Of a stretch of 63,028 nucleotides of DNA, positions 44,277-45,197 are shown in pieces. Source of the DNA: Stylophora pistillata. Lineage: Eukaryota. How positions within the stretch are numbered: position 1 is the first letter of the stretch; each line of letters starts with the position of its first letter. The stretch covers positions 73,414-136,441 of the forward strand of contig NW_019218224.1 of the NCBI RefSeq assembly GCF_002571385.2, read 5' to 3'. The notes under the pieces are model-generated. The model made no database searches and had not been told where the DNA came from. It worked only from the letters and a program-made list of their open reading frames with translations. Position numbers and translations under genes: made by a program.

Positions 44277-45197
44277 CTAGGTTTTGGATAACTCAAATTC
44301 ATTTGGTCTCTCTCTCTGTGGGCGGTCTTGGTGCGAGTCGGCTCGGAGGGGAATATTTATATTTAGATGGTCAGCGAGGAACCTTTGTTTTCGCAAATAA
44401 ATGCAGAGGAATTCGATCAAAATAAGAAACACAAACGTTCCATTCATTGCGAGAACAATGTGCAACCAGAAAGTTTTCTTGTCTGCCCGTGAATTGTGAC
44501 ATTCGATTCGGATTTGTTCCGAGTTTTTCCCCCAATTTCCGAGCTGTCCACTTGCTGGTGTTAAATAACAGACAAATTCGGGTTGAAAGTCAGAAGGATA
44601 GAGCAGCAAAGCTTGTAAGATCATGAACACTACTCCTATAACAAGCCTTATGAAAAGCTGACAACAGTAAGCAATGAAAAGCTTACGTCTTCTTCTTTGG
44701 CCTTTCTCGTCGAGTGACTGTCTCTCGGAATCATCGTTACACCGTACGCGTTTGCTGAAAGAATAACGGTAAGCATTATTAAGCCTTGTTTGGTTTTCAG
44801 CGTCAAGTGACTTCTTTTTGGTATGAGGAAGCGGTCCGCTGTTCTGTAACTGATCGACTAGAGGACTCGCTACTTGGGCGTAAACCGCACAAACGAACCC
44901 AACAAGGAGGAAATTTATGATAACGAAGCCGTAGACAGGGACACTGAATTTGTTATATTCTCTGTCGTATTGGTCGAAACACATTCCCTGGTAGAGGTCG
45001 GTGTTATAGCTTTCCGGAGCCTTGCCGCAGAGAAAGTCAAACCTGGATTCCCTGTGTTCGATGTCTGCAAAGACACCAGAAAAGGTTATTGCGAGCCCGA
45101 ACCAACAGATAACTGCTAAGTAACTTAGCTGGTTTAAGGTTTTCGGCGCAAGTATTTCTTTAAGAGTCTTAGCATCCCCAAACTTAGCCACATCCAT
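44277..45197 (-). CDS. Intronless four-transmembrane connexin-like (large-pore channel fold) protein, 306 aa
   Basis: Open frame from the ATG at 45197. Four hydrophobic segments at about aa 24-44, 85-108, 173-200 and 243-268. Loop motifs are ESRFDFLC(x15)CFDQY and YPSDFQPEFVC(x22)ECHNSRADKKTFW...LILIEF. A TATAAA lies at 45289-45284. Confidence 0.8.
   Translation of the reverse strand: MDVAKFGDAKTLKEILAPKTLNQLSYLAVICWFGLAITFSGVFADIEHRESRFDFLCGKAPESYNTDLYQGMCFDQYDREYNKFSVPVYGFVIINFLLVGFVCAVYAQVASPLVDQLQNSGPLPHTKKKSLDAENQTRLNNAYRYSFSKRVRCNDDSERQSLDEKGQRRRRKLFIAYCCQLFIRLVIGVVFMILQALLLYPSDFQPEFVCYLTPASGQLGNWGKNSEQIRIECHNSRADKKTFWLHIVLAMNGTFVFLILIEFLCIYLRKQRFLADHLNINIPLRADSHQDRPQRERPNEFELSKT

What the first reader, a model, noticed from the sequence alone, without database searches (positions are those of the whole stretch)
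44277..45197. Connexin-like four-TM channel gene in a non-chordate (coral-like) genome
Seen: an intact intronless 306-aa ORF with 4 TM segments. Its motifs align by eye with vertebrate connexins. ESRFDFLC...MCFDQY resembles DEQSxFxC...VCYD. LFIAYCCQLFIRLVIGVVFMILQALLLY...EFVC resembles Cx43 LLRTYIISILFKSxFEVAFLLIQWYIY...VYTC. IECHNSRADKKTFW...FLILIEF resembles VDCFLSRPTEKTIF...ALNIIEL. It has four extracellular Cys (C57, C73, C210, C233), equivalent to Cx43 C54, C65, C187 and C198; the two absent ones (C61, C192) are each other's disulfide partners. Established: connexins are considered chordate-specific, and innexins/pannexins have two Cys per loop. Inference: a pre-chordate connexin-fold protein, possibly a hemichannel or immune pore rather than a docking gap junction.
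Basis: partly seen in the sequence, partly recalled or inferred. Interest (0 to 1): 0.92.

Follow-up and report, generated by a model that had tools for sequence, protein, structure and literature searches.

The report
Coral connexin-like hemichannel gene, already described
This is a real, transcribed coral gene for a connexin-type membrane channel, but a June 2026 preprint already described the family and tested this gene's Pocillopora counterpart as an ATP-releasing hemichannel, so it confirms rather than discovers.

Summary
Window 44277-45197 (minus strand) is an intact 306-aa ORF. It has four hydrophobic helices and two near-invariant Cys in each extracellular loop (C57, C73; C210, C233).

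It is a connexin homolog:
- Pfam Connexin PF00029 scores 41 bits against a 31.3-bit cut-off.
- A family profile hits only connexins among solved structures (34 sequences; best is Cx31.3, E 6e-10).
- An AlphaFold2 model (pLDDT 80.7) matches connexins first.
- No innexin, pannexin or CALHM profile matches.

The genome is a coral's, not a chordate's. It holds at least 58 family matches, mostly inside long NACHT-LRR-type open frames.

This copy stands alone. No NACHT remnant lies anywhere in the window. PolyA RNA reads straight through the stop codon, from the minus strand. A decayed tandem copy lies 2-3 kb upstream.

The gene is the positional ortholog of P0001. P0001 matches pmCxL30 (A0A3M6TUS9) of Butler et al. 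(bioRxiv 2026), which was shown to be a depolarisation- and CO2-opened ATP/glutamate hemichannel that forms no gap junctions. The two CO2-gating residues are conserved here (K172, R269). Selection is purifying but weak (dN/dS 0.6-0.8).

Another first-stage note on this window (s1-781862, a decayed NLR linker after the stop) found no support.

The parts
44277..45197 (-). Complete single-exon CDS of a stand-alone connexin-like (CxL) protein, 306 aa, about 35.5 kDa. The stop codon is at 44277-44279.
   Evidence: ORF. Pfam PF00029 41 bits against cut-off 31.3. In-frame stop 12 codons upstream of the ATG. No splice joints in RNA.
45132..45197 (-). N-terminal cytoplasmic or pore segment, aa 1-22, with a short charged helix (aa 3-15; 4 K/R and 3 D/E). 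It is about 5 residues longer than in the Pocillopora ortholog.
   Evidence: AF2 secondary structure. Pairwise alignment with P0001. Charge count.
45054..45131 (-). TM1 (aa 23-48)
   Evidence: AF2 helix 23-48. Hydropathy peak 26-44.
44937..45053 (-). Extracellular loop 1 (aa 49-87), with the ESRFDF-C57 motif and C73. It has two Cys and no N-glycosylation sequon.
44841..44936 (-). TM2 (aa 88-119)
44733..44840 (-). Cytoplasmic loop (aa 120-155): disordered and basic. It carries a 30-aa insertion relative to the Pocillopora ortholog.
   Evidence: pLDDT about 48-56. Alignment gap. 8 K/R.
44601..44732 (-). TM3 (aa 156-199). It includes K172 in 'KLFIAY', which is equivalent to the carbamylated K140 of pmCxL30.
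   Evidence: Preprint section 9 and its supplement.
44493..44600 (-). Extracellular loop 2 (aa 200-235): a beta hairpin with C210 and C233. This is the most diverged part relative to the ortholog.
44394..44492 (-). TM4 (aa 236-268), preceded by the connexin-like 'C-H-N-S-R-A-D-K-K-T-F-W' motif.
44280..44393 (-). Cytoplasmic C-terminal tail (aa 269-306), disordered. It begins with R269, which is equivalent to R232 of pmCxL30.
43795..44276 (-). 3' untranslated region, at least 480 nt. RNA is continuous with the CDS across the stop codon, and there is no detectable NLR remnant.
   Evidence: X9 polyA RNA contig 43795-44472. No match to a CxL-NLR profile, and no blastn or tblastx match to the loci around paralogous CxL domains.
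45198..45276 (-). 5' untranslated region, at least 79 nt.
   Evidence: X9 RNA contig 44909-45276; zero depth in X9 from 45324 to 46979.
47222..48605 (-). Tandem CxL pseudogene in three pieces. 48605-48360 covers NT-TM1-E1. 48364-48086 covers TM2-TM3 in another frame, with stops. 47491-47222 covers E2-TM4. About 600 bp of unrelated sequence lies between the last two pieces. It is absent from the collinear Pocillopora-type contig L039.
   Evidence: tblastn, ORF list, profile hits with stops, synteny. It is 67-77% identical in DNA to the intact gene.

Best explanation
The ORF is a functional, stand-alone member of the anthozoan connexin-like (CxL) branch of the connexin superfamily, in a scleractinian coral genome. 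It is the positional ortholog of Pocillopora pmCxL30.

Inferred mechanism: the 4-TM subunits assemble, probably as hexamers, into a large-pore plasma-membrane hemichannel. The charged N-terminal helix lines the pore. Two disulfides (C57-C233 and C73-C210 by analogy with Cx26) brace the extracellular loops.

Like its ortholog, the channel should open on depolarisation and on raised CO2. CO2 gating would work through carbamylation of K172 (start of TM3), which then bridges to R269 (end of TM4) of the neighbouring subunit. Opening would release ATP, glutamate and similar small molecules. It should not dock into gap junctions.

Most paralogs in this genome carry the same channel domain at the N-terminus of NACHT-LRR receptors. 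This copy has no receptor part.

What is shown here: homology, topology, the Cys pattern, transcription, stand-alone architecture, orthology, and conservation of K and R. What is inferred from the ortholog's published assays: oligomer state, permeation, and voltage and CO2 gating.
For: Homology to connexins:
- Pfam PF00029, E 2.4e-10, 41 bits, above the 31.3 cut-off; no innexin, pannexin or CALHM hit at E<=10.
- The family profile against solved structures gives 34 connexin sequences at E<0.01 and nothing else. The best is the Cx31.3 hemichannel (E 6.3e-10), and Cx26/Cx43/Cx46 align from TM1 to TM4.
- AF2 model pLDDT 80.7, pTM 0.74, with a connexin-like layout.
- All Foldseek matches listed (ranks 1-50) are connexins. 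VIA-align's top five are connexins: Z 13.3-13.6, 17-21% identity, at least 92% of the target aligned.

Family context:
- 190 homolog clusters.
- 44 of 49 long homologs carry NACHT and 29 carry LRR.
- At least 58 matches in this genome, mostly in open frames of 500-5009 aa.

Stand-alone architecture:
- No NACHT, linker or LRR signal anywhere in the 63-kb window.
- An RNA contig crosses the stop codon unspliced.

Expression:
- PolyA RNA contigs cover 43795-45276, while the adjacent 45324-46979 is silent in the same run.
- Stranded raw reads put the first mate on the + strand only.

Orthology:
- Locus L039 is collinear with window 41936-50360.
- The window's copy and P0001 pair with SH-aLRT 100.
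- P0001 from its Met is 257 aa and 29.8 kDa, starts MDAEALKKI, and has K140, R232 and 'KLFLAY'. That is how the preprint and its supplement describe pmCxL30 = A0A3M6TUS9.
- K172 and R269 are conserved here.

Selection: pN 0.215 against pS 0.342, Fisher p 0.001.

Published function of the ortholog: membrane puncta, ATP and glutamate release on depolarisation and CO2, loss of CO2 gating in K140R and R232A mutants, and no dye coupling.
Against: - No functional data exist for this protein itself.
- It differs from pmCxL30 by a 30-aa cytoplasmic-loop insertion, an N-terminus about 5 residues longer (the pore and gating element), and a strongly diverged E2 with a 5-aa indel. Overall amino-acid identity is only about 60%.
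- dN/dS is high (0.58-0.79), and 0.73 over TM3-E2-TM4.
- Five of the six codon differences seen in RNA contigs are non-synonymous.
- The neighbouring copy is already a pseudogene.
- RNA depth is low.
- The Pfam match of the single sequence covers only the C-terminal half.
- Fold search alone does not separate connexins from pannexin (Z 13.0) or LRRC8 (Z 12.5).
- The homo-oligomer prediction gave no verdict.
- The identification of P0001 with pmCxL30 rests on length, mass, the N-terminal nonapeptide, the motif and two residue positions, not on a full sequence comparison.
- The supporting paper is a preprint.
Confidence: 0.78

Rival explanations
1. It is a decaying or functionally relaxed duplicate: still open and transcribed, but no longer a working channel, and on the same path as the pseudogene next to it.
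For: - dN/dS is 0.58-0.79.
- Five of six codon differences in RNA contigs change the amino acid.
- The adjacent tandem copy is broken.
- There is a 30-aa loop insertion and the start codon has shifted relative to the ortholog.
- RNA depth is low.
Against: - The ORF is intact in two genera separated by dS of about 0.35-0.44.
- pN is significantly below pS (p 0.001).
- All four loop Cys, the ESRFDF and C-H-N-x-R-A-x-K-K-T-F-W motifs, K172 and R269 are kept.
- It is present in polyA RNA from several studies.
- The AF2 model is confident over all four TMs.
Confidence: 0.08
2. It is the first exon of a CxL-NLR. The channel domain would be spliced to a NACHT-LRR exon lying elsewhere, as in the Desmophyllum relative P0003.
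For: [quoted passage not shown]
- In locus L041 the P0003 CxL frame is followed at once by a NACHT-LRR frame.
- 92% of anthozoan CxLs are NLR-fused.
Against: - A polyA RNA contig runs unspliced from inside the CDS through the stop codon for at least 480 nt, and no joints were seen there.
- The CxL-NLR profile finds no NACHT, linker or LRR anywhere in the 63-kb window, including 44 kb downstream.
- Neither the ortholog's contig L039 nor P0002's locus L040 has one either.
- The supplement lists pmCxL30 as NACHT: No, LRR: No.
Confidence: 0.04
3. It is not a connexin homolog. It would be a divergent innexin/pannexin/LRRC8-type or unrelated 4-TM protein that resembles connexins by convergence.
For: - It has two Cys per extracellular loop, as innexins do.
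- VIA-align places pannexin 1 (Z 13.0), pannexin 2 (12.8), LRRC8 (12.5) and INX-6 (10.1) close to the connexins.
Against: - Sequence profiles discriminate. PF00029 is above its curated cut-off and no innexin or pannexin family appears even at E<=10.
- The family profile hits 34 connexin structures and no innexin, pannexin, LRRC8 or CALHM.
- Identity in structural alignments is 17-21% to connexins against 7-12% to the others, with near-complete coverage of the connexin chains only.
- The preprint's clustering and HHpred give the same answer.
Confidence: 0.03
4. The contig is chordate DNA or a contaminant, so the gene is an ordinary connexin.
For: Cross-species contamination has produced false non-chordate connexins before, as with the echinoderm case (bioRxiv 10.1101/2023.01.05.522624).
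Against: - The protein is at most about 20% identical to any solved chordate connexin.
- Its close relatives are coral proteins, such as a Desmophyllum pertusum entry and a Pocillopora-type ortholog in conserved synteny.
- At least 58 family matches are spread over more than 25 contigs of this 398-Mb genome, mostly fused to NACHT-type frames.
- RNA libraries labelled 'coral metagenome' hold the stretch at 95-100% identity.
Confidence: 0.01

Closest known systems
pmCxL30 (UniProt A0A3M6TUS9, Pocillopora), from Butler et al., bioRxiv 10.64898/2026.06.13.731801
   Same: - It is the positional ortholog, with collinear flanks and a sister relationship at SH-aLRT 100.
- Both are stand-alone CxLs without NACHT or LRR, encoded in a single exon, with two Cys per loop.
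- Both have a charged N-terminal helix.
- The Lys at the start of TM3 and the Arg at the end of TM4 are conserved (K140/R232 there, K172/R269 here).
   Different: - Amino-acid identity is about 60%.
- The window's protein is 306 aa against 257 aa, because of a 30-aa cytoplasmic-loop insertion, a longer C-tail and an N-terminus about 5 residues longer.
- E2 is strongly diverged, with a 5-aa indel.
- The window has a decayed tandem copy upstream that the Pocillopora-type contig lacks.
- Function was tested only for pmCxL30.
Anthozoan CxL-NLRs (connexin-like domain + NACHT + LRR)
   Same: - They share the same channel-domain family (37-54% identity).
- They have the same Cys pattern.
- Many paralogs lie in the same genome.
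   Different: This gene lacks the linker, NACHT and LRR entirely. It cannot by itself couple ligand sensing or NTPase oligomerisation to the pore.
Vertebrate connexins, especially Cx31.3/GJC3 (PDB 6L3T) and Cx26/GJB2
   Same: - The 4-TM fold with an N-terminal helix and beta-hairpin loops.
- Conserved sequence signatures in E1, TM3, E2 and TM4.
- Cx31.3, like the cnidarian CxLs, works as a hemichannel; that description is the title of PDB entry 6L3T.
- Cx26 has CO2 gating by a carbamate bridge.
   Different: - Identity is only 14-21%.
- There are two Cys per loop, not three; the middle disulfide is missing.
- The carbamate bridge is proposed between TM3 and TM4, not TM3 and TM2.
- No gap-junction formation was seen in the cnidarian members tested.
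Innexins / pannexins / LRRC8
   Same: - A similar 4-TM large-pore architecture, with Z 10-13 in structure comparison.
- Two Cys per extracellular loop.
- Pannexins also work as non-junctional ATP-release channels (established knowledge).
   Different: No detectable sequence relationship. Structural identity is lower and the aligned coverage of those chains is only partial.

Membership tests
Connexin superfamily (Pfam PF00029 / IPR038359) | Significant match to the curated Connexin profile. | tested here: met
   PF00029 scores 41 bits against a 31.3 cut-off, E 2.4e-10, over aa 138-266 = profile 112-223/225. The family profile aligns to Cx31.3 over positions 43-262, and to Cx26/Cx43/Cx46 from TM1 to TM4.
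Connexin superfamily (Pfam PF00029 / IPR038359) | Four TM helices with cytoplasmic N- and C-termini and a short N-terminal helix. | tested here: met
   AF2 helices at 3-15, 23-48, 88-119, 156-199 and 236-268. Four hydropathy peaks, with K/R enriched in the middle loop and the tail. Orientation is inferred from the positive-inside rule and from Cys-bearing loops.
Connexin superfamily (Pfam PF00029 / IPR038359) | Three conserved Cys in each extracellular loop (three inter-loop disulfides). | tested here: not met
   There are only two per loop: C57, C73 and C210, C233. By HMM alignment these are the first and third connexin positions. The preprint notes the same for all anthozoan CxLs and for vertebrate epsilon-clade connexins.
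Connexin superfamily (Pfam PF00029 / IPR038359) | The fold matches solved connexin subunits better than other families. | tested here: inconclusive
   All Foldseek matches listed (ranks 1-50) are connexins. VIA-align's top five are connexins (Z 13.3-13.6), but pannexin and LRRC8 lie within 1 Z.
Connexin superfamily (Pfam PF00029 / IPR038359) | Hexameric hemichannel assembly. | tested here: inconclusive
   The three-copy complex job returned 'no answer'. The tools cannot model a hexamer. The preprint reports AF3 hexamer and heptamer models for other CxLs.
Connexin superfamily (Pfam PF00029 / IPR038359) | Head-to-head docking into gap junctions. | not testable with these tools
   The ortholog pmCxL30 showed no plaques and no dye transfer. 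There is no N-glycosylation sequon in E1 or E2 here, so glycan blocking is not the reason.
Anthozoan connexin-like (CxL) family (Butler et al. 2026) | The sequence clusters with anthozoan CxL domains. | tested here: met
   Homologs are at 37-53% identity, including a Desmophyllum pertusum protein. There are 190 representative clusters, and the tree places it inside the family.
Anthozoan connexin-like (CxL) family (Butler et al. 2026) | The CxL domain is encoded in one exon. | tested here: met
   An uninterrupted ORF and no RNA joints across it.
Anthozoan connexin-like (CxL) family (Butler et al. 2026) | The domain sits N-terminal to NACHT(-LRR). This is typical (92% of members), not obligatory. 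| tested here: not met
   No NACHT, linker or LRR in the window, and the transcript runs through the stop codon. It belongs with the NACHT-less minority, like pmCxL30.
Anthozoan connexin-like (CxL) family (Butler et al. 2026) | The carbamylation pair for CO2 gating (Lys at the start of TM3, Arg at the end of TM4), present in a subset of members. | tested here: met
   K172 and R269 align with K140 and R232 of the ortholog. The motif 'KLFIAY' equals the one listed for pmCxL62. Function was not tested.
Innexin / pannexin (PF00876 and relatives) | Match to innexin or pannexin profiles, or to solved innexin or pannexin sequences. | tested here: not met
   None appears at E<=10 in Pfam, and none among the PDB profile hits.

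The most novel reading that the evidence does not exclude
The stand-alone CxL is not merely a channel that lost its receptor. It would be a conserved, syntenic orthogroup (window gene / pmCxL30, with P0002-type relatives) at the base of the clade that holds most of this genome's CxL-NLRs. It would work as a free pore subunit that co-assembles with, or is gated by, the membrane-anchored CxL-NLR receptors. Its fast-evolving E2 loop would be shaped by contact with microbes or symbionts. That would make it the effector or decoy arm of a channel-forming innate-immune system in corals.
Probability: 0.12. Interest if true: 0.6.

Novelty: already known. Interest (0 to 1): 0.3.

Why it matters
Connexins outside chordates overturn a textbook split (innexins in invertebrates, connexins in chordates). 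They also link large-pore channels to NLR-type innate immunity.

That point was made in June 2026 by Butler et al., who also assayed this gene's ortholog. What this locus adds is modest but concrete:
- An independent confirmation starting from raw sequence.
- Evidence that the NACHT-less form is a syntenic orthogroup conserved between two coral lineages, not an annotation artefact.
- Transcript evidence that it ends at its own stop codon.
- Conservation of the CO2-gating Lys/Arg pair despite about 40% amino-acid divergence.
- Signs of rapid evolution (E2 loop, loop insertion, birth and death of a tandem copy), typical of immune gene families.

A CO2-opened ATP-release channel would be physiologically interesting in a calcifying, symbiotic animal that faces ocean acidification. 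That remains to be tested for this protein.

Tried and rejected
- **Complex prediction, three copies of aa 1-280:** 'no answer' (score 0.00, controls not run). This is neither support for nor evidence against oligomerisation.
- **Single-sequence phmmer against the PDB:** only a marginal hit (chicken Cx26, E 0.057). The family profile was needed.
- **Decayed NLR linker after the stop (note s1-781862):** the CxL-NLR profile against six-frame translations found nothing. Neither did blastn or tblastx of 43300-44330 against the loci around 29 paralogous CxL domains (these reach about 1.5 kb beyond each domain, so cover linker and NACHT start) and two foreign loci. Not supported at this sensitivity.
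- **NACHT exon elsewhere in the window:** tblastn with all homologs of 430 aa or more gave no hits outside the two CxL loci.
- **The look-up of encoding contigs with the window's own protein:** not on record. The tool may withhold the window's own genome, so this says nothing about annotation status.
- **Rfam scan of 42000-50500:** no RNA family. The very deep, short RNA pile at about 47071-47107 stays unexplained.
- **Pfam on the neighbouring ORFs (1460 aa and 198 aa):** no family.
- **Short/long labels on the tree:** the labels are scattered. Many 'short' database proteins are fragments or split gene calls; P0003, for example, is followed directly by a NACHT-LRR frame. I therefore did not use the tree to argue an order of gain or loss of the NLR part.
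- **Species name:** run and organism names are coded.
- **Disulfide geometry:** it could not be measured because model coordinates are not exposed.
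Full report
**1. The observation**

The minus strand of the window carries an ORF at 44277..45230. An in-frame stop lies 12 codons upstream of that ATG.

Hydropathy shows four segments, with peaks at aa 26-44, 88-106, 181-199 and 247-265. The two predicted extracellular loops each contain exactly two Cys (C57, C73; C210, C233) and no N-glycosylation sequon. 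In a 56-sequence family alignment (A1) these four Cys are among the few nearly invariant columns.

By those alignments the retained Cys are the first and third of each connexin loop.

**2. Is it a connexin homolog?**

Sequence evidence:
- Pfam gives Connexin PF00029 at E 2.4e-10 and 41 bits, against a curated cut-off of 31.3. The match covers TM3-E2-TM4.
- Even at E<=10, the only other entry is a sub-threshold DUF805.
- A profile of the family searched against all solved structures returns 34 distinct connexin sequences at E<0.01 and nothing else. The best is the Cx31.3/GJC3 hemichannel (E 6.3e-10, profile positions 43-262). Cx26, Cx43 and Cx46 align from TM1 to TM4.

Structure evidence:
- The AlphaFold2 model built on A1 has mean pLDDT 80.7 and pTM 0.74. 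It has an N-terminal helix, four long helices, a beta hairpin in E2 and a disordered cytoplasmic loop.
- All Foldseek matches listed (ranks 1-50) are connexins.
- The Foldseek-independent VIA-align search also ranks connexins first: Z 13.3-13.6, 17-21% identity, nearly the full target aligned.
- Pannexin (Z 13.0), LRRC8 (12.5) and innexin (10.1) are close behind, at 7-12% identity.

Fold alone therefore does not separate these large-pore families. The sequence profiles do.

**3. Whose genome?**

The window is part of a 398-Mb assembly of 5513 contigs. Several results point to a coral:
- RNA libraries labelled 'coral metagenome' hold parts of the stretch. Laid contigs agree at 95-100%.
- The nearest named homolog is from the coral Desmophyllum pertusum.
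- The genome has at least 58 matches to the family profile, on more than 25 contigs, most inside open frames of 500-5009 aa.
- Of 49 long homologs from other sources, 44 carry NACHT and 29 carry LRR_6.

That architecture, together with at most about 20% identity to the solved chordate connexins, rules out a chordate origin or contamination. I did not establish the species because names are coded.

**4. Prior knowledge**

Welzel & Schuster 2022 (PMC8769644) found no connexin-like proteins outside chordates. [quoted passage not shown]
- Connexin-like (CxL) domains occur in anthozoans, an annelid and a brachiopod.
- There are 4-100 copies per coral genome, and 92% are fused to NACHT.
- The domains are single-exon and have two Cys per loop.
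- HHpred's top hit is Cx31.3.
- The non-NLR members fall mostly in one clade, whose NLR members have an exon boundary after the CxL domain.

They also tested function. The stand-alone pmCxL30 localises to the plasma membrane and releases ATP and glutamate on depolarisation and on raised CO2. K140R and R232A abolish the CO2 response. The three cnidarian constructs tested form no gap junctions.

**5. Relation of the window's gene to pmCxL30**

The best homolog, P0001, lies on a 5.5-kb contig, L039. That contig is collinear with window 41936-50360, with flanks at 79-83% DNA identity. The two genes are sisters with SH-aLRT 100. P0001 is therefore the positional ortholog.

From its Met, P0001 has these features:
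- It is 257 aa and 29.8 kDa.
- It begins MDAEALKKI.
- It has K at 140 in 'KLFLAY' and R at 232.

The preprint's text and supplement describe pmCxL30 = A0A3M6TUS9 with the same length, N-terminal helix, motif and K140/R232, and list it as NACHT: No, LRR: No.

The window's protein keeps both residues (K172 in 'KLFIAY', and R269). It differs in three ways:
- a 30-aa insertion in the cytoplasmic loop;
- an N-terminus about 5 residues longer, because the ortholog's Met codon is deleted and an upstream ATG is used;
- a strongly diverged E2.

**6. Stand-alone, transcribed, constrained**

Stand-alone:
- tblastn with all long homologs finds nothing in the window beyond the two CxL loci.
- A 1028-position CxL-NLR profile, run with filters off against all six-frame segments, matches only its CxL positions 4-248.
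- blastn and tblastx of the 3' region find nothing in the loci around the paralogs' CxL domains, which reach about 1.5 kb beyond each domain.

Transcribed:
- PolyA RNA contigs of run X9 cover 43795-45276. One 678-nt contig crosses the stop codon unspliced.
- The upstream 45324-46979 is at zero depth in that same run, which serves as the silent control.
- No joints occur in the gene.
- In two stranded raw-read runs, the first mates lie only on the + strand, as expected for a minus-strand RNA.

Constrained: against the ortholog, dN/dS is 0.58-0.79 depending on the method. It is 0.44 over NT-TM2 and 0.73 over TM3-TM4. pN is 0.215 against pS 0.342, Fisher p 0.001. Selection is purifying but weak, as is common in immune-type families.

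**7. Surroundings**

Two to three kb upstream on the same strand lies a second CxL copy in three pieces: 48605-48360, 48364-48086 and 47491-47222. It has a frame change in TM2, stops, and about 600 bp of foreign sequence inside E2. It is a pseudogene.

It is 67-77% identical in DNA to the intact gene and is absent from the Pocillopora-type contig.

The relatives just below the pair on the tree differ in architecture:
- P0002 is also stand-alone, with no NACHT within 8 kb.
- P0003 of Desmophyllum is followed at once by a NACHT-LRR frame. That is the split architecture the preprint mentions.

This fits an origin of the free channel by loss of an intron-separated NLR exon, or the reverse. The tree's short/long labels are too noisy to decide.

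**8. Mechanism**

Shown here: homology, topology, the Cys pattern, transcript structure, orthology, and conservation of the gating pair.

Inferred from the ortholog's assays and from connexin structures:
- Subunits assemble, probably as hexamers, into a plasma-membrane hemichannel. The charged N-terminal helix sits in the pore and gives voltage sensitivity.
- Two disulfides brace the loops.
- CO2 carbamylates K172, which bridges to R269 of the neighbouring subunit and opens the pore to ATP and glutamate.
- The channel does not dock into gap junctions.

The oligomer prediction I ran gave no verdict and is not used either way.

**9. Verdict**

However, the family, its non-chordate distribution, its immune-gene context and the hemichannel function of this gene's ortholog were published as a preprint five months before this scan. 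I rate it 'already known', with modest added value:
- synteny-backed orthology of the NACHT-less form;
- transcript evidence for the stand-alone architecture;
- conserved CO2-gating residues;
- rapid evolution, with a dead tandem copy alongside.

Noticed in passing
window 47071-47107: A stretch of about 36 nt has very high RNA depth in all four runs (summed contig depth above 1000 in X9). There are loose ends with variable sequence on both sides, and an 'opposite strands' joint at 47062/47071. It looks like a short repeat or hairpin shared by many transcripts. There is no Rfam match.
   Followed up: partly
window 16783-21165 (-): An uninterrupted 1460-aa ORF, rich in Ser, Pro, Glu and Lys and apparently disordered, with no Pfam family even at E<=10. 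It is probably one giant exon of an uncharacterised coral protein.
   Followed up: partly
window 49157-49753 (-): A 198-aa ORF with no Pfam match. Its region is 83% identical in DNA to the stretch holding a 196-aa called gene upstream of the ortholog in L039. That is more conserved than the CxL gene itself.
   Followed up: partly
window 2560-3228 (-): An exon-sized ORF encoding a von Willebrand factor type A domain (PF00092, E 3e-22).
   Followed up: no
window 37126-37930, both strands: Four overlapping ORFs of 223-243 aa on both strands, in the most AT-rich part of the window (GC 0.275 at 36001-38000). This is probably a low-complexity or repeat stretch.
   Followed up: no
G000 contig C802 (7589-98237), also C76, C186, C1435: CxL domains are clustered. 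At least 10 matches lie on C802 within 91 kb, some with many stops. C186 holds a heavily decayed copy. C1435 has two adjacent long-frame copies. These are tandem arrays with birth-and-death turnover.
   Followed up: no
G000:C527:154333-155091 (L018): A CxL domain lies inside a 5009-aa uninterrupted open frame, and another inside a 2514-aa frame on C2040. These are far longer than a usual CxL-NLR, so extra domains are likely.
   Followed up: no
L041 1723-4936 (Desmophyllum pertusum, MU825880.1): A second CxL-NACHT-LRR copy lies 3 kb upstream of the P0003 gene. It is broken into more than 12 frame pieces and is a tandem pseudogene.
   Followed up: no
window 47704-47842: In two raw-read RNA runs, some reads skip 137 nt with non-canonical TT..AT ends. 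This lies inside the roughly 600-bp insert of the pseudogene. It is probably a paralogous or polymorphic deletion rather than an intron.
   Followed up: no
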